This document shows, piece by piece, positions 4,330 to 48,007 of a stretch of DNA of 64,000 nucleotides; within the stretch, counting starts at the first letter, position 1; each line of letters begins with the position of its first letter. A model generated the notes under the pieces. The model did not search any database. It was not told the origin of the DNA and saw only the letters and a list, made by a program, of their open reading frames with translations. Made by a program: the position numbers and the translations under genes. The stretch is taken from the IMG/VR virus record IMGVR_UViG_3300009104_001827, positions 124,001 to 188,000 of that record; one strand, given 5' to 3'.

Positions 4330-4358
4330 AGTTTAACATGAGGGCGCGCTTATTGCAA
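4330..4358 (-). promoter_or_regulatory. sigma70-type promoter for nrdA
   Basis: TTGCAA (4358-4353), 17 bp, TAAACT (4335-4330). Confidence 0.55.
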
Positions 4359-4384
4359 GTAAAATATCAACAACTTATTCACAA

Positions 4385-5200
4385 TTATAAGTTTTTTATA
4401 TCCTGAACCCACCCGTCTTCTTTTGTTGTTAAGCGCCTGTATTTTCTGTAGCTGGCGGTCCATATGGATCCTGGCATTTTTGCTATAGGCAATACATCGA
4501 AATTTTCCTTCATGATTTTTTTGGACTTATACTCCTTAGGTTCAACGTTGACCGCCTTTAACAATGCGTGGCAAATTAATTGCTCTGGAAACCTGAACCT
4601 GCACTTCTCGGACGTGGTCGACAAAAACTCCGCTAACTTAAAGCCGTCCTTTAGGCTTCTTGTTCTACCTCCGATGATATGATCCGACGGGTGAAACTTC
4701 TCCGCAGAGTCTTTTCGGAAGTAAATGTCCGAAGTGAGGAATTTTCCGATAAAATCGGCGCTTATAAGCTTTCTGTAAAATACATCTAGCGCTGGAAATA
4801 TTTCGTCAGATCTGGTTTTGATAGAAAGATAGCCGGTCGCTCGCTTGAGCCCGTTGTGGGTTGTGTGATTTTGATAAGCCCATGGATTCGGCCCTCTTTT
4901 TGAATTGTTGTTTTTGTACCGAGATAAATTGTTGTAATCATTTTGTTCGATATGGACCAGCGGATCTTCGACAAAGTCTTTGATAATGCCCGTGTCGTCG
5001 TCGCTCCAGTGGGAGATTACTAAATTGCCATACTCCTTGTACTTGGTGTCTTTAATTAGCTTAAGATAGTGAGGGATGGACTCGTTCATTCTTTTATGGA
5101 GTGGGCCCTGTACAATAATGGATAGTGAGCACTCTAATCTTTTAAACCTAATGAGTAGATCCTTTAGAAAGTTTACCTCCCAAGACTGATTGTTGACCAT
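4385..5200 (-). CDS. WavE-like LPS/glycan biosynthesis protein
   Basis: SIIVQGP, VISHW, IKTRSDE motifs resemble WavE; sits in sugar cluster. Confidence 0.6.
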   Translation of the reverse strand: MVNNQSWEVNFLKDLLIRFKRLECSLSIIVQGPLHKRMNESIPHYLKLIKDTKYKEYGNLVISHWSDDDTGIIKDFVEDPLVHIEQNDYNNLSRYKNNNSKRGPNPWAYQNHTTHNGLKRATGYLSIKTRSDEIFPALDVFYRKLISADFIGKFLTSDIYFRKDSAEKFHPSDHIIGGRTRSLKDGFKLAEFLSTTSEKCRFRFPEQLICHALLKAVNVEPKEYKSKKIMKENFDVLPIAKMPGSIWTASYRKYRRLTTKEDGWVQDIKNL

Positions 5201-5206
5201 GATAAT

Positions 5207-5629
5207 TTACACTAAAAAGTCCGAGCAAACTCCAAAGCAGGATTGAAATTTCATATACTTTGCATTGGAAGATACTATTACTGACTTTTCGCACACCTTT
5301 TGATGTGGATACGTCCATATGTAACCTTTTGATGTTAAGGTATATGCGTCATTTTCATGCCAGAAAACATTTAAATTTACTATGTTGGACAATAATGATA
5401 ATGCCCCTATGTTTTTACAGTGAATCCAGAGGTGTTGATGGTTTCGCAAGAGGAAGTCTACGTCGCTCTCGTATTGTGGCTCATCATGTCCGAAGTATAT
5501 TCCGTCTAACGCCCAAACGTCCACCTCTGCATCATACCCACGCTTAAACGCCCTCTCCAGGTAATCTGGGGAATTCTCGTCCTTGGCATTCTTGCCGTCA
5601 ATGTTGCCTCTGTGTGCTATTAGCTTCAT
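5207..5629 (-). CDS. Small GDPD/PLC-like phosphodiesterase
   Basis: MKLIAHRGN, ENS, EVDVW, GHD, WIHCKN, GVCSD. Confidence 0.75.
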   Translation of the reverse strand: MKLIAHRGNIDGKNAKDENSPDYLERAFKRGYDAEVDVWALDGIYFGHDEPQYESDVDFLLRNHQHLWIHCKNIGALSLLSNIVNLNVFWHENDAYTLTSKGYIWTYPHQKVCEKSVIVSSNAKYMKFQSCFGVCSDFLV

Positions 5630-35429: not shown

Positions 35430-36704
35430 ATGAAAAGGAGAACCTTTATAGAGGTTGGCGCAGCAACTGGAATTGGCAGTCTCACCTTGCCCCAATTGCT
35501 TGCGTCAAATAAAAGAGCACTTAATGATAATAAATCGATTATCGTTGTTTGGATGAATGGAGGGCCGTCACATCACGAAACCTTTGACCCTAAACCATAC
35601 GCACCCCAACCATTCAAGGGGCACTTTGAGGCGATCCCTACAGTTGCAGACGGGATACAGCTCCCCGAGCATCTAGTTAAGTGCGCGGACTGCATGGACA
35701 AATGGGCCATAATTAAGGGGCTATACCACGACAACAACAACCATAGCTCTGCGCATGAAATTATGCACTCTGGCTACAAAGCCAAGGAGCCTAATCAGCA
35801 ACAAAATTTTTACCCCAGCATAGGATCAACAATTGCGGAACATGCCAAGAGAGACGGCGAAGTTCCCCCATATGTTGTTATCCCCAACCACAGCAGAGGA
35901 ACTCGTCCCGGATATTTGCCTCATGAATTCGGGCCTTATGAAACAAAGACTCGCCCTTCTTCTAGCGAAACATACAAAGACACGAATTTCACACTCAACG
36001 AATCACTAACCATTAATAGAGTTGACAATAGAGGAGATTTATTAAAATCCTTCGATAACTTTAGGTCGGTTTTAGATAAATCTGGAATGACGAAGTCCAT
36101 TGATGAATTCAACATAAAAGCTCAAGGACTACTTACTAGCGGGCAAGCAGCAAAGGCCTTCGATATTGAAAAAGAATCTACATTCACAAAAGATTTGTAT
36201 GGCCCAGGATTCGGCCGTGATTTACTACTCGCAAGGCGCTTAGTTGAAAACGGCGTAAAAATGGTTACCGTAAAAACTCCCTTTGGCTGGGACACTCATC
36301 AAGCGAGCGACAAAAGCATGGGAAACAAGAACCTGCCCCAGTTCGACGTGGCGTTTAGCGCGTTAATTAACGACCTTCATTCCAGAGGCATGATGGAAGA
36401 CGTTATGGTTGTAGCTTGGGGTGAATTCGGTAGAACCCCAAAGATTAATGCCAATGGAGGCAGAGACCATTGGTCTCGCTCAATGGCTGCCGCCATCGCA
36501 GGAGGAAAGGTGAGCGGGGGCGTTGTCGCCGGAGAAAGCGACAAAACTGGCTCAGAGCCCATAACAGGAATAACCCCTCCAGACGTACTAGTTACGCTTT
36601 ATGACCACATGGGAATAAACCCAAAACACAATTACTATGATCACAGCGGGAGACCTCACCCAATAATTAACTCAGGTAGAATACTTACAGAATTATTCGT
36701 ATAA
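35430..36704 (+). CDS. DUF1501-family protein with Tat signal
   Basis: MKRRTFI Tat motif; MNGGPSHHETFDPKP, GWDTH, WGEFGRTPKINANGGRDHW; GTGTAA at 35415-35420. Confidence 0.9.
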   Translation: MKRRTFIEVGAATGIGSLTLPQLLASNKRALNDNKSIIVVWMNGGPSHHETFDPKPYAPQPFKGHFEAIPTVADGIQLPEHLVKCADCMDKWAIIKGLYHDNNNHSSAHEIMHSGYKAKEPNQQQNFYPSIGSTIAEHAKRDGEVPPYVVIPNHSRGTRPGYLPHEFGPYETKTRPSSSETYKDTNFTLNESLTINRVDNRGDLLKSFDNFRSVLDKSGMTKSIDEFNIKAQGLLTSGQAAKAFDIEKESTFTKDLYGPGFGRDLLLARRLVENGVKMVTVKTPFGWDTHQASDKSMGNKNLPQFDVAFSALINDLHSRGMMEDVMVVAWGEFGRTPKINANGGRDHWSRSMAAAIAGGKVSGGVVAGESDKTGSEPITGITPPDVLVTLYDHMGINPKHNYYDHSGRPHPIINSGRILTELFV

Positions 36705-36713
36705 TATAAACAA

Positions 36714-38678
36714 ATGAAAAATAAAAAACTCAAACAACTATCCATTATTAATTTAATTATAGGATATATAACATTAATGCTATTTAGCTTATTAGTAATA
36801 CTGAACCAACCGACAGAATTGATGGCTGAAGATCAAGACCTTACAGTGGTCAAGGCTTCTGACGAAGATAAAACGGAAGCCCTAGAGCCGCCAGACGAAG
36901 TTAGCGCAAAAGAAAAAGAAATAATCTATATAGACGGGCACCCAACAACATATATTAGAGACAATAGTATAGGCGTAGATAGGCTATCAGGTGTAATTAT
37001 TGATAACGTACCCAACAGACTGGTCGAAAGGGACGACCTAAGGGGTAATATCGCGATAGCAAGAGACACTAGAAATGAAAACCTATTAATAGATAGGCGC
37101 GATAATATAATTATTGATGAAACAATTGATAGACACAATTATAGCAATAGGACTGGCGCTAGCGTCGGTGATAGGCTATATGGGGTTCGTAATAACTCTT
37201 TTGTTGATAATAAAAACAATAGAAGAGATCGGTTGGTTGAAGACATTGATGCTGGAATTCTAGATAGGAGGCTAAATGAGGCAAACCCCTTCGAGGAAAA
37301 CACTGAAGAAGTCGGCGAAGACTTTGGATTAGACGGAAACGATTTCGCTGGAGTTACGCTAGCAGAAGACGATGAAGGTGAGTTAGATTTTGATATTGAC
37401 GATTTCAAAAATGCAGAAATGGGCTCAAAAGGCTACGGAGTCGATAAAGGAAACCTGTACGCCTACAACTACCCCAGCCAGGGCGTTGGAGCTGGTATTG
37501 GAAATGCCGGTGTTGGCGCCGCAGCAGGATTTGCGGGCATTGGCGCCGGAGTTGGACAGGCAGTACTCAACGGAGAAACCGTCCCTACCCTAGGAGGAGT
37601 AGGAACATCTCCCATCATTCCCGGCAATCTGGAAGTTACCCCCGAAAACGACAGAGACGGAGATGGGCTTCCCGCCTCAGTTGAATCTCAAATTGGAACC
37701 AACCCAAACAATGCCGATACAGATGGTGACGGCCTAAGCGATGGAGACGAAGTGTTTAGCTATTCTAACCCCCTAGATAAAACAAGCACCCCCCTCGATT
37801 CCGGCTCGGCTCCCCTCCCCCAATTTGGCGGGGTTGGCGGCTTAGTCAGTGGAGCAGGATCAGGTGTTGCGGCCGGCTTGGTAACCGGCATGGTTAAGAA
37901 GCAACTCGGAATTGGAATTGCCCCCAAGGGGTGCGCCGAGTGCGGAGGTGAGTGCAAAGGGCACGGACACGGGCACGGACACGGAAAGCACGAATACGAT
38001 TTGCCGCCCGATGGAGCGTTGCACATTATGATCCATGTCGACGGAAGTGGGAGTATTCTCGCAACCAGGCGCCAGCTGGACATCATGAAGGACACTCTTA
38101 TGAAGGACGCGCTACTTCCCTACTATAATAATGACGAGTCTCTATACAATAAGAGGGTGACCATTATAGATAACTCGGGAGAACGAACGCTGAGATTCTA
38201 TACGGAAGCAGCAAAGAAAGACAATGTTCTAGCGATTGCGTTCCAAGATGAAGCGGCCCCCGATTATCACCTACCCAATTTTAATAAGACCCCACAAAAT
38301 GCGTATAGCGCAGACTTGGGCAAGCTTAGATCGAACCTGAACGGATACGGCGGATTATACAGAGGCATAATGTTCCAAGTGGACAGGGGACGCACTTTTG
38401 CAAAGTCGTTCAAGGAGCTTGTCGAGTGCGCGTGGAATGGAGAGGGGTACCTGGAAAAACCGGGGACGAACCTCAAGAAGTATCACAGAGACAACAACCT
38501 GCACAATATCAAGAATAAGAACGGAATCGTTTTCAGTGATGAGTATCACGCGAAGTCTGAGGGTGATCCACAATACTATTTGGACTTGATCTTCAAGGCT
38601 TCGAAACGAGTGGGTCTGGACCTTCAAGCAAAGGGCGCTGGACTTACGGACGGTAAATATAACCAAAAGATTGATTGA
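36714..38678 (+). CDS. Exported protein with Ca-binding DxDxDG repeats, His-rich linker and vWA-like domain
   Basis: N-terminal hydrophobic anchor; DRDGDG/DTDGDG; CAECGGECKGHGHGHGHGKH; VDGSGS MIDAS-like motif. Confidence 0.65.
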   Translation: MKNKKLKQLSIINLIIGYITLMLFSLLVILNQPTELMAEDQDLTVVKASDEDKTEALEPPDEVSAKEKEIIYIDGHPTTYIRDNSIGVDRLSGVIIDNVPNRLVERDDLRGNIAIARDTRNENLLIDRRDNIIIDETIDRHNYSNRTGASVGDRLYGVRNNSFVDNKNNRRDRLVEDIDAGILDRRLNEANPFEENTEEVGEDFGLDGNDFAGVTLAEDDEGELDFDIDDFKNAEMGSKGYGVDKGNLYAYNYPSQGVGAGIGNAGVGAAAGFAGIGAGVGQAVLNGETVPTLGGVGTSPIIPGNLEVTPENDRDGDGLPASVESQIGTNPNNADTDGDGLSDGDEVFSYSNPLDKTSTPLDSGSAPLPQFGGVGGLVSGAGSGVAAGLVTGMVKKQLGIGIAPKGCAECGGECKGHGHGHGHGKHEYDLPPDGALHIMIHVDGSGSILATRRQLDIMKDTLMKDALLPYYNNDESLYNKRVTIIDNSGERTLRFYTEAAKKDNVLAIAFQDEAAPDYHLPNFNKTPQNAYSADLGKLRSNLNGYGGLYRGIMFQVDRGRTFAKSFKELVECAWNGEGYLEKPGTNLKKYHRDNNLHNIKNKNGIVFSDEYHAKSEGDPQYYLDLIFKASKRVGLDLQAKGAGLTDGKYNQKID

Positions 38679-38703
38679 CTTTTTGCCTCCCCGACAACAC
38701 AAT
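38675..38703 (+). promoter_or_regulatory. sigma70-type promoter for clpP
   Basis: TTGACT, 17 bp, CACAAT; ATG 38711. Confidence 0.5.
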
Positions 38704-38710
38704 ATATTGT

Positions 38711-39448
38711 ATGTCAAACAAAAGTAAGGACCGAACACCAGAAGAGATAGAGGCTAATGTCGAAAAATTAAAAGCCGAAGCATCAAAAGCTCAGGCTGAA
38801 GCTCGGAAAGTTATAGCTGAAGCGGATACCGCAGAGACAAGAGCTCAAAAGGAAAGGTTTGAGTTCGAAAGGTATCAGGAAGAAAGAAAAAAAAGGCTTT
38901 CCGTTGATAGGGAAAATCGCGTATATCGATTCAGTGGTGGGGTAGATAAATCCTCAGTTGAAAAATGCAGAGACGCCCTAACTGAATGGTCGAGATGCTC
39001 TCCAGGGTGTGATATAGAAATTGTATTTGCCTCCCCTGGCGGAGGAATAACTGCGGGGTTTGAATTATTTGACTACATCCAGCAATTAAGATTTGCGGGT
39101 CACAAAATCACAACAGGATCTTTAGGTATGGCTGCATCTATGGCGGGCATATTGCTTCAAGCTGGCGAACATCGCTGGATTGGGCACCAATCTTGGATAC
39201 TAATACATCGGGCAGCCTTTGGGGCCATTGGTAAAACTTTTGAAATTGAAGATGAGGTGGAATTAATTAAAAGAATTGAAGAAAGGATAATTGAAATTTT
39301 CACCTCTAGATCAAATCTTACAAAATTAAAAATTAAAAGAAATTGGAACAGAAAAGATTGGTGGATAAATGCAGACGAAGCGCTAGACATGGGTCTTGTT
39401 GACGAAGTTAGAGGCAAACTGCCAGAGGGAAAAAACATCGGCGGCTAG
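38711..39448 (+). CDS. clpP: ClpP-family serine protease
   Basis: SPGG, GMAASMA (Ser), ILIHR (His), DWWINADEALDMGLVD (Asp); coiled-coil N-terminal extension. Confidence 0.88.
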   Translation: MSNKSKDRTPEEIEANVEKLKAEASKAQAEARKVIAEADTAETRAQKERFEFERYQEERKKRLSVDRENRVYRFSGGVDKSSVEKCRDALTEWSRCSPGCDIEIVFASPGGGITAGFELFDYIQQLRFAGHKITTGSLGMAASMAGILLQAGEHRWIGHQSWILIHRAAFGAIGKTFEIEDEVELIKRIEERIIEIFTSRSNLTKLKIKRNWNRKDWWINADEALDMGLVDEVRGKLPEGKNIGG

Positions 39449-39544
39449 CGGACGATTCCGTTCTAAAGTCCATTCCTAAAACACACGCCCCAGCAGACAG
39501 GGGCAACAAAAGCCAAGGTTTCCTCACCTAGACATACATTAACC

Positions 39545-39573
39545 TTGACAATTAAGCTTAAATCGGGTAGACT
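39545..39573 (+). promoter_or_regulatory. sigma70-type promoter for polymerase operon
   Basis: TTGACA, 17 bp, TAGACT. Confidence 0.7.
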
Positions 39574-39592
39574 ATATACAATTCCGATTAAG

Positions 39593-40318
39593 ATGATTCC
39601 TCTATTTACTTCTCACTACAGCATTGGCAAAAGCATATTAACGCTCGACCACCCAGACAAGCAAACCGAGGGCGGCTCAACCAGCGTATTTAGTATCGCT
39701 CAAAAGAACAACCTAAAAGAAATATTTTTGGTAGAAAACTCACTGACCGGATTTCCTCAGGCGCTCACGATATCAGCGGAGCTAGGAATACAGTTATGCT
39801 TCGGCCTTTTGCTCAAAATCTGCGAGCAAGACCATAAGATTATCGTCTTCGCAAAAAACTCAAAAGGATGCAAAAGATTAAATCAAATATACAGCGAAGC
39901 GTTCGCGGGAGATAAAGAATGTATCTCAACCGAAAACTTAAAAAAATTCTGGAACAGTAAGGAGCTTATGCTCTGCATACCGTTTTACGACTCTTTTATA
40001 TATAAAAATATAATGACGTTTGACAGTTGCACGCCAGACCTGTCCGCGTTCAGTCCGCTATTTTTTCTCGAAGAAAACAACCTACCTTTTGACAATCTCG
40101 TTCGCCAGAAGGTCGAAGCATATGCCGAATCAAGAGGGCATGACACGCAGTTAGTTAAATCCATTTACTACGAAAACCAAGAAGACGCAGAAGCCTTGCA
40201 GGTCTATAAATGCATATGCAGCAGAAGGTTCGGAAAGAGCTCTCTGTCAAAACCGAATCTAGACCACTTCGGAAGTGATGAATTTAGCTTCGAGAGCCTA
40301 CTTAAGAAGAAAAAATGA
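39593..40318 (+). CDS. Stand-alone PHP domain of DNA polymerase III alpha
   Basis: SHYSIGKS, IIVFAKNSKG..RL match DnaE PHP; metal ligands look degenerate. Confidence 0.8.
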   Translation: MIPLFTSHYSIGKSILTLDHPDKQTEGGSTSVFSIAQKNNLKEIFLVENSLTGFPQALTISAELGIQLCFGLLLKICEQDHKIIVFAKNSKGCKRLNQIYSEAFAGDKECISTENLKKFWNSKELMLCIPFYDSFIYKNIMTFDSCTPDLSAFSPLFFLEENNLPFDNLVRQKVEAYAESRGHDTQLVKSIYYENQEDAEALQVYKCICSRRFGKSSLSKPNLDHFGSDEFSFESLLKKKK

Positions 40319-40827
40319 AATACAAGCTATACAATTCAGGGAAAACCTTCCTTGACAGATCCCCTATTTCAGGCAGGGGCGTTTTCGCCTCTGAACCCTT
40401 TCGCAGGGGAGAACTCATAGAGCAATGCCATTTCATTATACCAGAACAAGATAAAGGCGGCAGAGATAAGGAACTCTTGAGATACATGTTTGCCATAACC
40501 AATGAAGAATCAATAAAATCCTCCAAGGAAACATTCCTTAAGATTTTTCTAGGAAATCTAATCGACAACAAGAAGGACGCGGGCAGCGAGCGCTCACAAG
40601 CAATAAAGAACTGCGTTGAGCTTGGATATAAATCGCTAGACAAACTATTCGATTCGGCAGTTGTACTCGGAAACGGAATGATATTTAATCATTCAGACAA
40701 ACCAAATATTGATTATTGTTTTAATGAAGACGACTTCTGCTTCGACTATAATGCATCTAAAGATATACAACAAAACGAAGAGCTCGTAATTAATTACGGC
40801 AACCCAGAAAGGGGAGATATAAAATGA
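40315..40827 (+). CDS. SET-domain protein-lysine methyltransferase
   Basis: SPISGRGVFA, IFNHSDKPN, DIQQNEELVINYG. Confidence 0.88.
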   Translation: MKYKLYNSGKTFLDRSPISGRGVFASEPFRRGELIEQCHFIIPEQDKGGRDKELLRYMFAITNEESIKSSKETFLKIFLGNLIDNKKDAGSERSQAIKNCVELGYKSLDKLFDSAVVLGNGMIFNHSDKPNIDYCFNEDDFCFDYNASKDIQQNEELVINYGNPERGDIK

Positions 40828-41465
40828 AAGAATCGCTATTAAGATTTAAAGACAAACAGAAATATCTTATTTTTGATTATGAAACCTGCAACCTCAACCT
40901 CATGTCAAAAGATAATAAACCTTGGCAGCTTGCATTTCTTTTAGTTCAGGGCAATAAAATATTAGACAAAGCCGACTACATACTCTCTTGGCCAGACATC
41001 AACGTCTCTAAAGACGCAGCCAGAATAACAGGCTTTTCCTACGCCAAGTATAATAAGAGAAAAAGCTGCCCGCTGAAGGCGTTAGATCACTTCGAAAAAT
41101 ATTTATACGATAAAAAAATCCTAACCGTCGGACACAACATACTCGGATTCGACTTATATATCCACAATATCCACCGCAAGCTTTGCGGGAAAACCTCCGA
41201 CTACTCATATATAGAAAATACGCTAGACACCGTGTGCCTTGGGAGGGCTATTAAAGCGGGTATAAAGAGGCAGAAGGGGACAGACCTACTATCGTGGCAG
41301 TATAGGCTATTAAACCACCGCCAAAAAGGCCTGAAGGTAACACTAAAGCAATGCTGCAAGGACTACGGAATAAACTACAATCCGGAAAAATTGCATGATG
41401 CGCTTTACGACATAGAGAAAAACAACGAAGTATTTCAAAAAATGCTATGGGAGGTGGAGGTATGA
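40824..41465 (+). CDS. dnaQ: DEDDh 3'-5' exonuclease (epsilon-like)
   Basis: FDYET, GHNILGFD, LHDALYD. Confidence 0.88.
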   Translation: MKESLLRFKDKQKYLIFDYETCNLNLMSKDNKPWQLAFLLVQGNKILDKADYILSWPDINVSKDAARITGFSYAKYNKRKSCPLKALDHFEKYLYDKKILTVGHNILGFDLYIHNIHRKLCGKTSDYSYIENTLDTVCLGRAIKAGIKRQKGTDLLSWQYRLLNHRQKGLKVTLKQCCKDYGINYNPEKLHDALYDIEKNNEVFQKMLWEVEV

Positions 41466-44017
41466 TATCCAACTTCAAAAAATACAAAGACTGCATGCCC
41501 CCAGGTGTACTGCTTCCGAATATTAAGATCAATAAGAAATATTACGACGAGCTCGAAATCCCGAGCGATTCATCCAATTTCGACTTCCTTAGACACTTAT
41601 GCCTAAAGGGAGTAAAAGAAAAAAATATTAACAAGAAAAACGATGACGAAAAGCAGACCTATTATTCTAGAGCAAAAATGGAACTCAAAATCCTTGACGA
41701 GCTTGGGTTTATCGACTACATTTTACTTAACTGGGATATTCTTGAGTATTGTCATAATAACAATATTCCTACTGGGCCTGGCCGTGGCTCGGCGGCTGGC
41801 TCGCTTGTTCTATATCTGATAGGCGTAACAAAAATAGATCCGGTAGAACATAATCTCTTTTTTGAGAGATTTGTCTCTAAAAGCAGGGCAAAATCCACAG
41901 AACATAAGGGAGTAAAATACCTTGACGGAGGACTACTGGCGGATATTGACAATGATATAGCCTACGAGCATAGGCAAGAAGTAATAAAATACATCGAGGG
42001 AAAACACCCAAATAGCACTGCAAAGATATTAACTTTAAATACGCTTAGCAGCAAACTCTGCCTTAGGGAATGCGGGAAAATAGTAGGAGAATTAGACGAG
42101 CAGGAAATTTCACTAATTACGGACGAGATTCCTAAGCAATTTGGCAAAGTAGACCCTCTTAGCGATTCCTATAATAAAAGCGAAAAAATTAAGGAATGGG
42201 CCGACGCCAATCCGCGCATATTCGGTGTTGCGAAAAAACTTGAAAACCTGAACAAGAACACGGGAGTTCATCCCTCCGGCATCGCAATTGCCGCAGAAAA
42301 TATCTCAAACATATGCCCAATACAAAAGACGAAAGACGGAAGCCTTATTACCGGGTACGATATGAATTGGGTTTCAGAATTAATGGTTAAATTCGACATA
42401 CTCGGACTTCGAACATTAAGCGTTATCAATACGACCTGCAAGCGAGTGGGCATATCGGCTGAGGACATAGACATAAATGACGAAGGGGTCTATCTCCCGT
42501 TGCAAGACCTTCGCCACCCTCATGGGCTTTTCCAAATTGAGGCAGATACAGACTATAAGGTTTGCAAGAAAATTCAGCCCAAAAATATAGAAGAGCTGAG
42601 CGCAGTACTGGCAATCGCTCGCCCAGGTGCATTGGACTTCTTAGATAATTATCACAATCACGTTTCCACGGGCAACTTCCAAAGCATACATCCCTTCTTC
42701 GACGACATCCTCTCGCACACCGGCGGCATCCCACTGTATCAGGAGCAGTTAATGCAAATGGCCGTAAAGGTTGGATTCACGCTTGACGAATCGGAGCAAA
42801 TAAGAAGAATAGTGGGTAAAAAGAAAATCAAAGAAATGCCGATATGGAAAGAAAAAATTAAAGATAAAATATCCGAAAACGGAGTTGATAAAGAAGCCGG
42901 AGACGTCCTATGGAGAGTGGCAGAAGATAGCGCAAACTATTCGTTCAACAAGAGTCACTCAATCGCATACTCCACTCTATCAGCCTGGACAACATATCTA
43001 AAATTCAAACACCCCCAACAGTTCTTCTTGTCATTGCTTCAGATGACTAGATTTGAGCCCTGCCCTCAAGACGAGATTGGCAAAATCAGTCAAGAGCTAT
43101 CTTCTTTTGGCATTAAACTATTGCCTCCAAATTTGGCAAAGTCAAAAATGGACTTCTCGATAGAGGGTCCAGATATACGCTATGGATTAAATAGCATTAA
43201 GGGAATTAGCGAAAAGTCGCTTAAGTCTTTAATGGAATTCAGAAAAGAGAGCGGAACCTCAAAATATGACATGTTCATGTCTGCCAAGCAGGCCGGACTG
43301 AATATAGGTACGGTTTGCGCCCTCATCCAGGCCGGAGCTCTCTCCAATTACAACGGCAGCAGGCCGCTGCTAGTATTGGAGGCTCAAGTATTCAACTCCC
43401 TGACAGAGAGGGAGAAAAGAAACTTTGTCGAACTAGGCCCAAAGTTTGAGTATAGATTGCTAGATTCTATAGTCCACGCAAGAGACAACGATCTTGTCGG
43501 GGACGACGGGAGACCCCTCTTTAAGGAGTCTAGATTTCAGACCTTCAAGAAAAAGTACGAGCCCTATAAGCAAATTTACATAAAAAATAGCAAGTCTCAG
43601 AGTTTCGCAGACTGGTATTTTGAGAATCAGCTATTAGGATATTCTTATAGCCAAAACCTAAGGTCTGTATTCTCAAGAAAACCTGAAACATTTGTAAATT
43701 ATAGCGACTACGAATTAATGGGCAAGAATTCCGCAGGAAGAATTATAGGGATGGTGCAGGATTCTTTTGTGAGGACCAGTAGAAGCGGAAATAAGTATAT
43801 GAAAATTGAAATTGCAGACGAGAGAGGAGTATTTCAATGCATGCTATGCAATAGTCGAAGAGGTAACAGGCTGGACGAATTCTTGGAAGACAACGACGTT
43901 CCAGATAAAAACAGTATAGTAATTGCCTATGGCTCCAAAGGGGAAGACGCCTTCTTTCTGGAAGACATGAAAATTATGGATGAGCAAATTTACATGAAGC
44001 TCGCAGACCTCAAATAG
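41462..44017 (+). CDS. dnaE: DNA polymerase III alpha catalytic core lacking PHP
   Basis: GPGRGSAAGSL, DIDND, GVHPSG, KFDILGL, YQEQLM, SFNKSHS, C-terminal OB fold; ATGA overlap at 41462. Confidence 0.95.
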   Translation: MISNFKKYKDCMPPGVLLPNIKINKKYYDELEIPSDSSNFDFLRHLCLKGVKEKNINKKNDDEKQTYYSRAKMELKILDELGFIDYILLNWDILEYCHNNNIPTGPGRGSAAGSLVLYLIGVTKIDPVEHNLFFERFVSKSRAKSTEHKGVKYLDGGLLADIDNDIAYEHRQEVIKYIEGKHPNSTAKILTLNTLSSKLCLRECGKIVGELDEQEISLITDEIPKQFGKVDPLSDSYNKSEKIKEWADANPRIFGVAKKLENLNKNTGVHPSGIAIAAENISNICPIQKTKDGSLITGYDMNWVSELMVKFDILGLRTLSVINTTCKRVGISAEDIDINDEGVYLPLQDLRHPHGLFQIEADTDYKVCKKIQPKNIEELSAVLAIARPGALDFLDNYHNHVSTGNFQSIHPFFDDILSHTGGIPLYQEQLMQMAVKVGFTLDESEQIRRIVGKKKIKEMPIWKEKIKDKISENGVDKEAGDVLWRVAEDSANYSFNKSHSIAYSTLSAWTTYLKFKHPQQFFLSLLQMTRFEPCPQDEIGKISQELSSFGIKLLPPNLAKSKMDFSIEGPDIRYGLNSIKGISEKSLKSLMEFRKESGTSKYDMFMSAKQAGLNIGTVCALIQAGALSNYNGSRPLLVLEAQVFNSLTEREKRNFVELGPKFEYRLLDSIVHARDNDLVGDDGRPLFKESRFQTFKKKYEPYKQIYIKNSKSQSFADWYFENQLLGYSYSQNLRSVFSRKPETFVNYSDYELMGKNSAGRIIGMVQDSFVRTSRSGNKYMKIEIADERGVFQCMLCNSRRGNRLDEFLEDNDVPDKNSIVIAYGSKGEDAFFLEDMKIMDEQIYMKLADLK

Positions 44018-44028
44018 TGTAAGTTATC

Positions 44029-46557
44029 ATGATGGAGCACAAACCAAACTTTACCCCCAGAGCGCAGAGGGCAATAGAAATATCAAAAAAAACCGCCAAA
44101 GACATGGGCTCGAAGACCGTTGCGCTCGAGCATCTTTTCCTGGGCATACTGCACCTCAAAGCAGGAGTAATCCACGAAGTGCTCTTGGGAGTGGGAATCA
44201 GCCCTGCTAATCTTATTACTGCCATTTCCAATAGAATAAAGGAAGAGGCAGTCTTCCACGCCTCTGAAGACACTCCCGAATTTGATCCAAAATTCAAGCA
44301 GGTACTAGAAATAGCTGCACTAATTAGCAAAAATTTTGGGCATGATTATGTAGGGATAGAGCACATGCTTTTAGCAATGCTAAAATATGACGGTTCTCCG
44401 ATTAATGAGTATTTCAAACTCCTCGACATACCCGAAGATCTGATTATTGAACAAATTAAAAACTATTTTCAGCTTACAGTGCCGGAGGTCCCGATCATAG
44501 GAGGGTTCCACCCTTTCTTTATAAATCCCCAAGGAAACCCCCAGAACCAAGCAGGGGCAGAGCCCTCCCAGAGTAAGCCCCGGCGCCAAACGATGATCGA
44601 TAAGTACGGGGTTAATTATGTGGAAATGGCGGCAGATAATAAATTTGACGAAATAATAGGAAAAGAATCCGAAATCCTGGAGGTATGTGAAATTTTATGC
44701 AGGAGAATAAAAAACAACCCAGTACTCCTGGGAGACCCTGGCGTTGGGAAGACTGCAATCGTAGAGGGCCTCGCGCAGTCTATAGTAAAAAGCTCCGCAC
44801 CAGAACACCTGCTTGATAAGCAGATATACGGGATAGATCTAGCCTCTATGATTGCGGGAACCAAATACAGGGGGCAATTTGAAGAAAGGCTCAAAGGAAT
44901 GCTTGAAGAAGCGATAGAAGACGATAGGATAATTTTATTCATTGACGAGCTGCACACCTTAGTCGGCGCTGGCAGCGCAGAAGGAACAATGGATGCGGCA
45001 AACATATTAAAACCCCTCCTTTCAAAAGGAGCCATAAGATGCATTGGAGCGACAACAAACAAAGAATACAAAAAAAGCATACTTAAAGACGGTGCGCTTG
45101 ATCGAAGATTTCAGCCCGTAACATGCAGGCAACCAAGCGAAAAGGAAACCCTAGAGATACTTAAGGGGGTAAAACATAAATATGAGGAATTCCATTACGT
45201 AGACTACGACCAAGAGTGCCTTAAGCTCATAGTAGATTTGGCAGCAAGATACATTCCGTCAAAGCAATTCCCTGACAAAGCGCTAGACATATTAGATCAA
45301 GTAGGCGCAAAAGTAAAAATAAAATCTTTTGTCCGGCCTAAGAAAAGCAAGGCAATGGAGCTAGAACTGGAAGACCTCATGAGAGAAGAAGATATCCTAC
45401 GAGGTCAAGGAATAGATTGCTCAGGAGTAAACAAAAAACAAGAAGACCTTCTAGAAAAATACTCAAAGTCCCTGCAGAACTGGGCAAACAAAAACTTTAA
45501 AAACAGAAAACGAATAAGGCCTCAGGATATTTACAGAACCGTCTCCCAACTCACCAACGTGCCCATGGCAGAACTCTCAAGGACTGACGCCCAGAGATTT
45601 CTCAACCTTGAAGATAAAATGAAATCAAAGATTATTGGGCAAGACCATGCGGTCGCGACAATCTGCAAAGCAATACTACGCTCAAAATCTGGACTCAGAA
45701 ATGAGAGCAAACCAATCGGCAGCTTTCTGCTTCTAGGTCAGACCGGTTTGGGTAAAACCTATACCGCAAAAACGATAGCCTCATCCCTTTTTGGGAGTAG
45801 TTCTGAAATAATTGCGGTAGACATGAGCGAGTATTCTGAAAAAATTTCCAGCACAAGACTATCGGGCGCTGCACCAGGCTACGTTGGCTACGAAGAGGGT
45901 TCCGCGCTAATAGACAAAATCACAAAAAACCCATATAGCGTAGTATTATTTGATGAAATAGAAAAGGCACACCCAGACGTAATCCAGTCTCTACTACAGG
46001 TCCTCGAGGAGGGTAGATTAACAGACGGACTAGGAAGGGTTGGCGATTTTACAAATAGCATAATTATCCTAACAGGCAACATAGGCTCGGAAATTGCCGG
46101 ACAGGGCGGTAGTATGGGATTCGCAGCAGCAGAAGACCAGCATTCTATTATTGTTGACAAAATTACCGAAAAGGCGAGCCAAGCACTTAGGCCAGAGTTT
46201 GTAAACAGGATAACAGAAGTTATAGTTTTTAATTCATTTAGTAAAGAAGATTTTTCCAAGATATTAAACTTAGAGCTCAAACCATTAAGGAAGAAACTCA
46301 AGGAAAGAGACATATCCCTACGCATAGGAAAGAATCTAAGAAGTTCAATTATAGAGAAAACTCAAGATTCAAACTATGGCGCCAGGCCTGTAGCAAGAAT
46401 AATTCAAAAAGAAATAGAGGACGAACTGGCTGAACTCCTAATTAACGGGAAGCTCAAAGACGGCGAAAAAATCTCTTTCACTGGGTCCGTCGGAGAAGTA
46501 AGTTATTCCATTACGGCAAAACCGGCTTCTGAGGATCAAACGCCTCCTCTTCCTTAA
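44029..46557 (+). CDS. clpC: ClpC/ClpA-type Hsp100 AAA+ ATPase
   Basis: Clp N-domain, GDPGVGKT, FIDELH, short M domain, GQTGLGKT, FDEIEKAH, SMGF loop. Confidence 0.9.
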   Translation: MMEHKPNFTPRAQRAIEISKKTAKDMGSKTVALEHLFLGILHLKAGVIHEVLLGVGISPANLITAISNRIKEEAVFHASEDTPEFDPKFKQVLEIAALISKNFGHDYVGIEHMLLAMLKYDGSPINEYFKLLDIPEDLIIEQIKNYFQLTVPEVPIIGGFHPFFINPQGNPQNQAGAEPSQSKPRRQTMIDKYGVNYVEMAADNKFDEIIGKESEILEVCEILCRRIKNNPVLLGDPGVGKTAIVEGLAQSIVKSSAPEHLLDKQIYGIDLASMIAGTKYRGQFEERLKGMLEEAIEDDRIILFIDELHTLVGAGSAEGTMDAANILKPLLSKGAIRCIGATTNKEYKKSILKDGALDRRFQPVTCRQPSEKETLEILKGVKHKYEEFHYVDYDQECLKLIVDLAARYIPSKQFPDKALDILDQVGAKVKIKSFVRPKKSKAMELELEDLMREEDILRGQGIDCSGVNKKQEDLLEKYSKSLQNWANKNFKNRKRIRPQDIYRTVSQLTNVPMAELSRTDAQRFLNLEDKMKSKIIGQDHAVATICKAILRSKSGLRNESKPIGSFLLLGQTGLGKTYTAKTIASSLFGSSSEIIAVDMSEYSEKISSTRLSGAAPGYVGYEEGSALIDKITKNPYSVVLFDEIEKAHPDVIQSLLQVLEEGRLTDGLGRVGDFTNSIIILTGNIGSEIAGQGGSMGFAAAEDQHSIIVDKITEKASQALRPEFVNRITEVIVFNSFSKEDFSKILNLELKPLRKKLKERDISLRIGKNLRSSIIEKTQDSNYGARPVARIIQKEIEDELAELLINGKLKDGEKISFTGSVGEVSYSITAKPASEDQTPPLP

Positions 46558-47545: not shown

Positions 47546-48007
47546 CTATTCCTCCAGAATTTCGATAAGCTTTTTATGCTTGGGGTTATTTGGGTCAAGC
47601 TCAAACGGTGGCCCATTATCAATTACAACATTTGTGCCAAGATTCTCAGACTTAAAAGCCTTTGTGAGTTTGTTTTTCAAGATTGTCCTATTCCCCGAAG
47701 GAAAAACCCCTGCGCGCACAGCAACCTCCTGGAGTTCGGTCAGACTCATTCCCGCCATATTCTCCTCAAATATCCTGGCGTCATTCGTTCCGTACGGATT
47801 GCTCTTTCTTACCTCCAGAATCTCCTCTAGCTTTTTAACGTACTCTAAGTTCTGCTCGTACGTTTTTCCTGTGGTTTGATTTAAATCTTTTAATTCCGGC
47901 TTCCTGGCGGCCTTGGCGGCCTTAGCTCGCTTAGCTGGCTTAACCCCTCGGGCGGGCTTACCCTTACTAGAGGCAGCTCTCTTCTTGTTTGTTTTTTTAG
48001 TACTCAT
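47546..48007 (-). CDS. Hypothetical protein with basic N-terminus
   Basis: K/A-rich histone-like N-terminus; SD AAGGAAG. Confidence 0.7.
   Translation of the reverse strand: MSTKKTNKKRAASSKGKPARGVKPAKRAKAAKAARKPELKDLNQTTGKTYEQNLEYVKKLEEILEVRKSNPYGTNDARIFEENMAGMSLTELQEVAVRAGVFPSGNRTILKNKLTKAFKSENLGTNVVIDNGPPFELDPNNPKHKKLIEILEE

What the first reader, a model, noticed from the sequence alone, without database searches (positions are those of the whole stretch)
40315..40827. SET-domain methyltransferase embedded in the replicase operon
Seen: all SET motifs, a roughly 60-aa insert, no post-SET cysteines, and ATGA coupling on both sides. Established: SET enzymes methylate lysines (histones; chlorovirus vSET; Chlamydia/Legionella effectors) and are little characterised in phages. 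Inference: methylates phage replisome or host nucleoid proteins; the K/A-rich protein at 47546 is a candidate substrate.
Basis: partly seen in the sequence, partly recalled or inferred. Interest (0 to 1): 0.7.

Follow-up and report, generated by a model that had tools for sequence, protein, structure and literature searches.

The report
Optional phage SET-domain lysine methyltransferase gene
A marine jumbo phage carries a small, apparently active SET-type protein-lysine methyltransferase gene between the pieces of its split DNA polymerase III, but close relatives have repeatedly and precisely lost it, so it is optional cargo rather than part of the replication machine, and its target is unknown.

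Summary
**Observation: confirmed.**
- Window 40315-40827 (+) is a 170-aa ORF. It matches Pfam SET at E 6e-15, and its best solved relative is chlorovirus vSET.
- All catalytic motifs are present.
- It has a ~54-aa insert relative to vSET and no post-SET cysteines.
- ATGA overlaps join it to both neighbours.

**Context.** The window lies in a 211-kb uncultured marine phage. The gene sits at a junction of a split DnaE: PHP piece | SET | epsilon-like exonuclease | Pol III alpha core.

**Distribution among 83 related loci that cover the junction:**
- The split replicase is always present, but SET is present in only 23.
- When present, SET is always at this junction.
- At least 8-10 gain or loss events are needed on the polymerase tree.
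- A relative rated 100% complete has no SET anywhere in its genome.
- The indel is exactly gene-sized and bounded by a 7-9-nt repeat at the SET and exonuclease start codons.
- In other relatives the same junction holds JmjC, GMP reductase, HNH or a degenerate SET.

**Selection.** Where SET is present, catalytic residues are invariant and dN/dS is 0.07-0.14.

**Verdict.** It is probably an active lysine methyltransferase carried as dispensable accessory cargo, not a replisome part. Its substrate is unknown. The K/A-rich protein gained no support. Small SET proteins are common in tailed phages, and I found no functional study of one. This is a new member of a known kind.

The parts
40315..40827 (+). 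SET-domain protein, 170 aa: vSET-like minimal SET with a SET-I-position insert and no post-SET zinc cluster
   Evidence: Pfam SET E 6.2e-15. vSET E 8.8e-10. The AF2 model's top Foldseek hit is vSET, TM 0.79 by target. dN/dS is 0.07-0.14.
40372..40380 (+). G20-R21-G22, the N-SET GxG motif (SAM pocket)
   Evidence: R21 and G22 are invariant and G20 is at least 90% conserved in 30 sequences. Its role is taken from established SET-domain knowledge.
40492..40653 (+). Residues 60-113: insert relative to vSET, at the SET-I position. It is predicted helical, mostly acidic in the family, and ends in the conserved L-G-Y (Y105 invariant).
   Evidence: Two-block alignment to vSET. Helices at 64-69, 73-83 and 91-102, but pLDDT is below 50 for residues 65-87. 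Length is 47-61 aa with mean net charge -5 in the family and 0 in this copy. It is not matched by any cellular fold cluster.
40687..40707 (+). N125-H126-S127-D-K-P-N131, the NHSxxPN motif, with D where zinc-binding SET classes have Cys
   Evidence: N125, H126 and N131 are invariant. It aligns with vSET N69-H70-S71.
40780..40797 (+). E156-L-V-I-N-Y161, the C-SET motif with the presumed catalytic tyrosine
   Evidence: E156 and Y161 are invariant in 30 sequences. Y161 aligns with vSET Y105.
40312..40320 (+). AAAATGAAA at the SET start: left copy of the short direct repeat that bounds the gene-sized indel
   Evidence: The same 9 nt occur at the exonuclease start. Sister phages lacking SET join the PHP 3' end directly to the exonuclease ATG.
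40821..40829 (+). AAAATGAAA at the exonuclease start: right copy of the repeat
39545..40318 (+). Stand-alone PHP-domain piece of a split DnaE. The real start may be the ATG at 39593.
   Evidence: Pfam PHP E 0.0011, below the cut-off. phrog_405 DNA polymerase, profile positions 65-265 of 1190, E 3e-8. NCBIfam DnaE N-terminus, E 3e-4. Conserved upstream of the exonuclease in all related loci that reach that far.
40824..41465 (+). DnaQ/epsilon-like 3'-5' exonuclease
   Evidence: Pfam RNase_T E 8e-8 and phrog_192 'DNA polymerase exonuclease subunit' E 2e-16. NCBIfam PolC exonuclease region E 1e-10.
41447..44017 (+). Pol III alpha core (palm, fingers, HhH) without a PHP domain
   Evidence: Pfam DNA_pol3_alpha E 8e-61, finger E 9e-31, HHH_6 E 6e-15, and no PHP match.
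47546..48007 (-).
   Evidence: No family hits. Homologues occur in SET-plus and SET-minus phages, with variable K/S/T-rich tails. Complex prediction gave no answer.

Best explanation
**What it is (inferred from sequence and predicted structure)**
- The gene encodes an active SAM-dependent protein-lysine methyltransferase of the minimal, vSET-like SET class.
- It carries a family-specific helical insert of about 52 aa at the SET-I position. In solved SET enzymes that position walls the substrate groove.

**How it is expressed**
- It sits at the PHP/exonuclease junction of a split DnaE and overlaps both neighbours (shown), so it is probably made together with the replication proteins (inferred).

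**Why it is cargo and not a replisome part (shown by comparative genomics)**
- It was probably present in the ancestor of one phage clade.
- It has since been removed many times by exact gene-sized deletions between the near-identical start regions of SET and the exonuclease.
- It has been swapped between lineages at least once.
- It is kept under purifying selection where present.
- The junction is a plasticity spot that carries other cargo in other relatives.

**Target (inferred, weakest step)**
- The target is most likely a basic protein, of host or phage, that matters only on some hosts or under some conditions.
- This rests on analogy with the few prokaryotic SET enzymes that have known endogenous substrates.
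For: **Enzyme identity**
- Pfam SET E 6e-15. vSET is the best solved relative by sequence and by fold.
- R21, G22, H39, N125, H126, N131, E156 and Y161 are invariant in 30 sequences down to 36% identity.
- dN/dS is 0.07-0.14 in eight unsaturated pairs.

**Coupling and expression**
- ATGA overlaps on both sides.
- No terminator-like site on the + strand between the PHP and polymerase genes; site counts are at chance level.
- A 714-nt contig in a marine metatranscriptome run bridges the PHP/SET junction. This is weak evidence.

**Fixed position, patchy presence**
- SET is at the same junction in L001-L007 and in 23 of 83 loci overall.
- The polymerase tree needs 10 changes of state, at least 8 of them forced by well-supported branches, against a shuffled mean of 19.9.
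- The SET tree mirrors the deep split of the polymerase tree.
- L034 and L024 are incongruent between the two trees (AU p 2e-4 and 7e-5).
- A relative rated 100% complete (204.9 kb) has no SET anywhere.

**Indel and hot spot**
- The indel is exact, with a 7-9-nt repeat at both start codons.
- The same junction carries JmjC/Cupin_8, GMP reductase, HNH and a degenerate SET in other relatives.

**Hints about the substrate**
- The insert is acidic, with mean net charge -5 in the family.
- cpnSET methylates Hc1, and Go1-SET methylates MC1-alpha (PMC3980110).
Against: - No biochemical data exist. SAM binding and methyl transfer are inferred.
- The insert is modelled at low confidence (pLDDT below 50 for residues 65-87). 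In this copy it is electrically neutral.
- No substrate was identified.
  - The complex prediction with the K/A-rich protein gave no answer.
  - No lysine in the neighbouring proteins tracks SET.
- RNA-library contigs may stem from contaminating DNA, and they do not cover most of the SET gene.
- Gain and loss cannot be told apart without a rooted tree.
- The groups used in the AU tests were named after the tree had been seen.
Confidence: 0.6

Rival explanations
1. SET is a working part or regulator of the phage replisome. It would methylate, or bind as a subunit, the PHP piece, the exonuclease, the polymerase core or a clamp or SSB partner, which would explain why it is kept between them.
For: - It has a fixed position between the PHP piece and the exonuclease, with overlapping reading frames.
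- A second, degenerate SET sits at the same spot in the distant relative L069.
Against: - It is absent from 60 of 83 loci that have the same split replicase, including sisters whose polymerase differs by only about 1-3%.
- It is absent from a whole relative rated 100% complete.
- No lysine column in PHP, exonuclease, polymerase or ClpB tracks SET beyond chance (best 4-5 of 9 pairs among about 2,200 columns of those four proteins).
- The junction also holds unrelated cargo such as GMP reductase and HNH.
Confidence: 0.1
2. SET is a counter-defence or host-takeover factor. It would methylate lysines of a host protein, or protect phage proteins from lysine-directed host attack, and would be useful only on certain hosts. 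That would explain the patchy distribution.
For: - Repeated loss, lateral exchange and location in a plasticity spot, together with strong purifying selection where present, form the pattern known for accessory and anti-defence genes (general knowledge).
- Small SET clusters are mostly viral (Uroviricota) in the ESM Atlas.
Against: - There is no match to any PADLOC model, although that library holds defence genes, not anti-defence genes.
- No host is known and no target is known.
- This overlaps with the best explanation and differs only in naming the purpose.
Confidence: 0.2
3. SET is a non-enzymatic or decaying remnant: a SET fold kept for binding, or on its way to being lost.
For: - The L069 copy at the same junction has lost the NH motif, the catalytic Tyr, H39 and Y57.
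- The gene is often deleted.
Against: - In the insert-bearing family every catalytic residue is invariant over 30 sequences.
- dN/dS is about 0.1.
- No frameshifted or truncated copies were seen at the junction.
Confidence: 0.05
4. SET is cargo of a selfish mobile cassette that invades the junctions of the split polymerase gene, as homing-endonuclease genes do.
For: - The junction holds an HNH endonuclease and candidate nucleases of about 155-176 aa in other relatives.
- SET has moved laterally at least once.
- The cassette boundaries are exact.
Against: - The SET cassette consists of the SET gene alone, with no nuclease or integrase in any SET-plus locus.
- The SET tree largely follows the polymerase tree, so descent is mostly vertical.
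Confidence: 0.05

Closest known systems
PBCV-1 vSET (A612L; PDB 1N3J, 3KMA), chlorovirus histone H3K27 methyltransferase
   Same: - It is the best solved relative by sequence (E 8.8e-10) and by fold (Foldseek E 9.5e-8, TM 0.79 by target).
- It is a minimal viral SET without a post-SET zinc cluster.
- GxG, NHS and the C-terminal catalytic Tyr align.
   Different: - vSET has 119 aa and almost no SET-I. The phage protein has an insert of about 54 aa there.
- vSET acts on eukaryotic histone H3 as a dimer (established knowledge). This phage infects a bacterium, and dimerisation was not tested.
S. pombe Set7 (PDB 5H6Z) and P. falciparum PFL0690c (PDB 4RZ0), small SET proteins without post-SET
   Same: They are the next best sequence and fold matches and have the same minimal architecture.
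   Different: - They are eukaryotic chromatin enzymes with about 20% identity.
- They lack the equivalent insert.
Prokaryotic SET enzymes with endogenous substrates: C. pneumoniae cpnSET (Hc1/Hc2) and M. mazei Go1-SET (MC1-alpha)
   Same: They are SET enzymes of cells without histones that methylate basic DNA-binding proteins (PMC3980110).
   Different: - They are cellular, not viral.
- No specific sequence relationship was shown here.
- The substrate of the phage enzyme is unknown.
Uncharacterised SET-domain proteins of tailed phages (for example uncultured Caudovirales A0A6J5L8Y2 and A0A6J5SSB1; Stenotrophomonas phage Ps15 ORF62)
   Same: - They share the fold and the small size.
- Atlas SET clusters are 86-96% viral.
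- The profile search found 969 cluster representatives at E below 1e-10, mostly 110-170 aa.
- The Ps15 ORF is annotated only as a SET domain protein of unknown function (PMC9025141).
   Different: - Nearly all of them lack the insert. Only about 4 representatives match the full length.
- The nearest ones (P0019, P0020) lie among small ORFs near a DOT1-like gene, not in a replicase operon.

Membership tests
SET-domain protein-lysine methyltransferases (Pfam PF00856) | Profile match above the curated cut-off over the whole domain | tested here: met
   56 bits against a cut-off of 22.4, profile positions 1-105 of 105.
SET-domain protein-lysine methyltransferases (Pfam PF00856) | N-SET GxG motif and the NH(S/A)xxPN motif that form the SAM pocket | tested here: met
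   G20-R21-G22 and N125-H126-S127...N131. R21, G22, N125, H126 and N131 are invariant in 30 sequences.
SET-domain protein-lysine methyltransferases (Pfam PF00856) | C-SET ELxxxY motif with the catalytic tyrosine | tested here: met
   E156 and Y161 are invariant. Y161 aligns with vSET Y105.
SET-domain protein-lysine methyltransferases (Pfam PF00856) | SET beta-fold | tested here: met
   The core of the AF2 models has pLDDT 85-97. All top matches in PDB, BFVD and AFDB are SET proteins. These are predicted structures only.
SET-domain protein-lysine methyltransferases (Pfam PF00856) | SAM binding and methyl transfer to a protein lysine | not testable with these tools
   This needs purified protein. 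The complex job included SAM but does not score small molecules.
SUV39/SET1/SET2-type SET enzymes | Post-SET Cys cluster, plus Cys in NHSCxPN, binding zinc | tested here: not met
   No Cys follows Y161, and the motif has D, not C. The protein therefore belongs with the vSET-like minimal class and not these classes.
vSET-like minimal SET | Homodimer as the active form | not tested
Core replisome component of this phage group | Present wherever the split replicase is present | tested here: not met
   SET is present in 23 of 83 loci and absent from a relative rated 100% complete.
Homing-endonuclease-type mobile cassette | A nuclease gene within or beside the inserted segment | tested here: not met
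   The SET indel equals the SET gene alone. An HNH gene occurs only in L069, next to a degenerate SET.

The most novel reading that the evidence does not exclude
- The PHP/exonuclease junction of this phage group's split DnaE would be a dedicated landing pad. It would load protein-modifying enzymes (SET in some phages, JmjC in others) for co-expression with the replisome.
- SET would be the first phage protein-lysine methyltransferase with a defined role. It would methylate a basic host or phage DNA-associated protein, or shield lysines from a host defence, in a host-dependent way.
Probability: 0.15. Interest if true: 0.75.

Novelty: new member of a known kind. Interest (0 to 1): 0.45.

Why it matters
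Small SET-domain genes turn out to be common in tailed phages: hundreds of clusters, mostly viral. I found no functional study of any phage copy in the papers searched, where they appear only as annotations.

This clade offers a natural experiment. It holds near-identical phages with and without the gene, an exact deletion boundary and intact catalytic residues. That makes the question 'what does a phage lysine methyltransferase do?' approachable by comparison and by simple biochemistry.

The finding also shows that the junctions of a split DnaE are hot spots for accessory genes. This warns against reading gene position in a replicase operon as evidence of replicative function.

Tried and rejected
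- **GenBank phages:** blastn and tblastn of the locus and of SET found nothing. The polymerase core finds only relatives below 35% identity, so there is no cultured relative or known host.
- **Other protein libraries:** PADLOC and NCBIfam gave nothing for SET or the K-rich protein. PHROGs gave only a weak match to an unknown family.
- **Complex prediction:** SET + SAM + K/A-rich protein scored 0.11 against a mark of 0.32. This is no answer and is not used as evidence either way.
- **Lysine-tracking scan:** I looked for a lysine that tracks SET in PHP, exonuclease, polymerase, ClpB, the K-rich protein and two neighbours across 9 sister pairs. Nothing rose beyond chance.
- **Promoter and terminator scans:** counts were at chance level.
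- **RNA evidence:** one metatranscriptome run holds contigs of a strain about 98-99% identical, including one across the PHP/SET junction. It does not cover most of SET, and DNA carry-over cannot be excluded. No RNA run holding the SET gene alone was listed.
- **JmjC link:** I checked whether JmjC and SET travel together. They do not: G000 has both, G001 has JmjC only and G002 has SET only.

Full report
**1. What is there**

The window is bases 124001-188000 of a single 211,117-bp virus record. It encodes a large terminase, a ClpP-like prohead protease, ribonucleotide reductase, RecA-like, DnaB, primase-like, PD-(D/E)XK and NUDIX proteins. It is an uncultured marine jumbo phage, and no GenBank phage is close.

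ORF 40315-40827 (+) encodes 170 aa.
- It matches Pfam SET over the whole profile, E 6.2e-15.
- Its best solved relative is chlorovirus vSET, E 8.8e-10. The alignment falls in two blocks that leave query residues 60-113 unmatched.
- Both neighbours overlap it by ATGA.
- There is no cysteine after the C-terminal motif, and the NHS motif is followed by D, not C.

**2. The protein**

AlphaFold2 models built on 16 and on 30 family sequences give a confident SET core (pLDDT 85-97). The insert is poorly defined and helical, with pLDDT below 50 for residues 65-87.

Foldseek ranks vSET first in the PDB (TM 0.79 by target), followed by PFL0690c, S. pombe Set7, SET8 and MLL. BFVD and AlphaFold DB return only SET proteins. 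The hits align about 110-125 of their own residues, so the insert is not shared with them.

In 30 family members, down to 36% identity:
- Invariant residues are L5, R21, G22, E36, H39, F40, D51, R56, Y105, V117-L118-G119, G121, N125, H126, N131, E156 and Y161.
- Y57 and S127 are nearly invariant.

By alignment, Y161 corresponds to vSET Y105 and N125-H126 to vSET N69-H70.

The insert is 47-61 aa long. It varies in sequence, is mostly acidic (mean net charge -5, but 0 in this copy) and ends in a conserved L-G-Y.

Pairwise dN/dS is 0.07-0.14 for the eight pairs with dS of about 1.1 or less. This is a functional, most likely catalytic, protein.

**3. The setting is a split DnaE**

The upstream 257-aa ORF is the PHP domain of a DnaE-type polymerase. 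The downstream genes are an epsilon-like exonuclease and an 856-aa Pol III alpha core that lacks PHP. The string is PHP | SET | exonuclease | core, followed by a ClpA/B-like ATPase.

**4. Relatives**

Fifteen homologues (43-93% identity) exist in marine metagenomes. In seven loci fetched through them, SET lies at exactly the same junction.

A scan of IMG/VR with the polymerase core returned 80 loci at 50-100% polymerase identity.
- All have PHP, exonuclease and core in that order.
- Only 23 of the 83 loci that cover the junction have SET, always at the same spot.
- In most of the others the PHP piece abuts the exonuclease gene within about 15 nt.

On the polymerase tree:
- SET-bearing phages are confined to one well-supported clade of 57 rows.
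- Presence or absence needs 10 changes, at least 8 forced by starred branches, against a shuffled mean of 19.9.

The SET tree reproduces the deep split and most groups of the polymerase tree, which argues for an old, mostly vertical gene. L034 groups with L024 for SET but not for the polymerase, and AU tests reject congruence (p 2e-4 and 7e-5). The groups were named after the tree had been seen.

A relative rated 100% complete by CheckV (204,906 bp) has no SET anywhere in its genome.

**5. How it comes and goes**

In sister pairs the difference is exactly one gene. The PHP 3' end joins the SET ATG in one phage and the exonuclease ATG in the other. The two start regions share a 7-9-nt repeat in seven of the nine pairs, (A)AATGAAAGA in the clearest case and AAAATGAAA in the window at 40312-40320 and 40821-40829. 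This fits deletion, or replacement, by recombination between the repeated start regions, and it preserves the overlap with the next gene.

**6. The junction is a hot spot**

Other relatives carry different cargo at the PHP/exonuclease junction:
- a JmjC/Cupin_8 protein (L049, L066);
- a GMP reductase (L066);
- an HNH endonuclease, an unknown protein of about 170 aa, and a 141-aa SET without the insert that has lost the NH motif, the catalytic Tyr, H39 and Y57 (L069);
- unknown proteins of 153-176 aa (L064, L073, L083).

The exonuclease/core junction also holds cargo in some relatives.

The window's own genome has the JmjC-GMP reductase pair elsewhere, at 59.2-61.1 kb. JmjC and SET occur independently of each other.

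**7. Function**

Shown:
- family membership by sequence and predicted fold;
- conservation and purifying selection;
- fixed position;
- dispensability;
- the exact indel.

Inferred:
- catalytic activity;
- co-expression with replication genes, supported by overlapping frames and by one metatranscriptome contig that bridges 39706-40383, with the caveat of possible DNA carry-over;
- a basic protein as target. This rests on the acidic insert and on the precedents cpnSET-Hc1/Hc2 and Go1-SET-MC1alpha (PMC3980110).

A replisome role is unlikely because near-identical phages do without the gene, and no lysine in the flanking proteins tracks its presence.

The K/A-rich protein (47546-48007, minus strand, beside head genes) has homologues in SET-plus and SET-minus phages, with variable K/S/T-rich tails. 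The complex prediction gave no answer. It remains a possible substrate, but nothing here supports it.

**8. What is known**

The profile search found 4,011 representatives, 969 of them at E below 1e-10. Nearly all are proteins of 110-170 aa matching in two blocks, that is, without the insert. Only about four match the full length.

ESM Atlas clusters most similar to the query are 86-96% viral, mostly Uroviricota. The nearest insert-less relatives lie on other marine phage-like contigs among small ORFs, close to a DOT1-like methyltransferase gene.

In the literature searched I found phage SET genes only as annotations, for example phage Ps15 ORF62, and no functional study.

The gene is thus a new member of a known kind. 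Its specific features are the insert and the location in a plasticity spot of a split polymerase.

**9. Verdict**

- Confidence that it is an active lysine methyltransferase is about 0.75.
- Confidence that it is dispensable accessory cargo and not a replisome part is about 0.85.
- Confidence in the combined account, including the target class, is 0.6.
- Interest is moderate.

Noticed in passing
window 39545-44017: The phage's DnaE is split into three genes: a PHP piece, an epsilon-like exonuclease and a Pol III alpha core without PHP. The arrangement is conserved in all 80 IMG/VR relatives down to 50% polymerase identity. The order PHP-exonuclease-core recalls PolC, and the exonuclease's best NCBIfam hit is the PolC exonuclease region.
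   Followed up: partly
L049:4500-5372; L066:3478-4359 and 4356-5339; genome G000:C1:59211-61086 (outside the window): A JmjC/Cupin_8 protein, paired with a GMP reductase in L066 and in G000, is another movable accessory module in this phage group. In L049 and L066 it occupies the very junction where SET sits here.
   Followed up: partly
L069:3614-5385: A distant relative has three genes at the junction: an unknown 169-aa protein, an HNH endonuclease, and a 141-aa SET without the insert that has lost the NH motif and the catalytic Tyr.
   Followed up: partly
window 35430-36704; L001, L004, L006 upstream regions: The phage encodes a DUF1501 protein (E 1.5e-86). Relatives add a PSCyt2/PSD1 protein beside it. 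As I recall, these families are typical of Planctomycetota and Verrucomicrobiota, which may hint at the host.
   Followed up: no
window 38675-39448 and 44029-46557: A ClpP-like protease (PHROG head maturation protease, E 2e-50) and an 842-aa ClpA/ClpB-like double-AAA ATPase flank the replicase genes. The ATPase is conserved after the polymerase in relatives above about 56% polymerase identity.
   Followed up: no
window 36714-38678: A 654-aa protein with bacterial TSP3 repeats, Gly-rich stretches and a His-Gly repeat. Partial matches occur only in L037 and L063.
   Followed up: no
L088:4117-6819; L090:2321-6393: Other marine phage-like contigs (113-136 kb) carry the nearest insert-less SET, in one case as a tandem double SET of 272 aa. 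A DOT1-like methyltransferase gene lies a few genes upstream.
   Followed up: no
window 47546-48007 (-): The K-rich-tail protein lies between the likely head genes and two small conserved ORFs. Its N-terminal tail varies greatly among relatives while residues from about 40 onward are conserved. It has no family match.
   Followed up: partly
window 38600-44100: Strains about 98-99% identical occur in independent marine metagenomes of other studies, including a 148.5-kb contig that spans the whole stretch with SET in place, and in one metatranscriptome run.
   Followed up: partly
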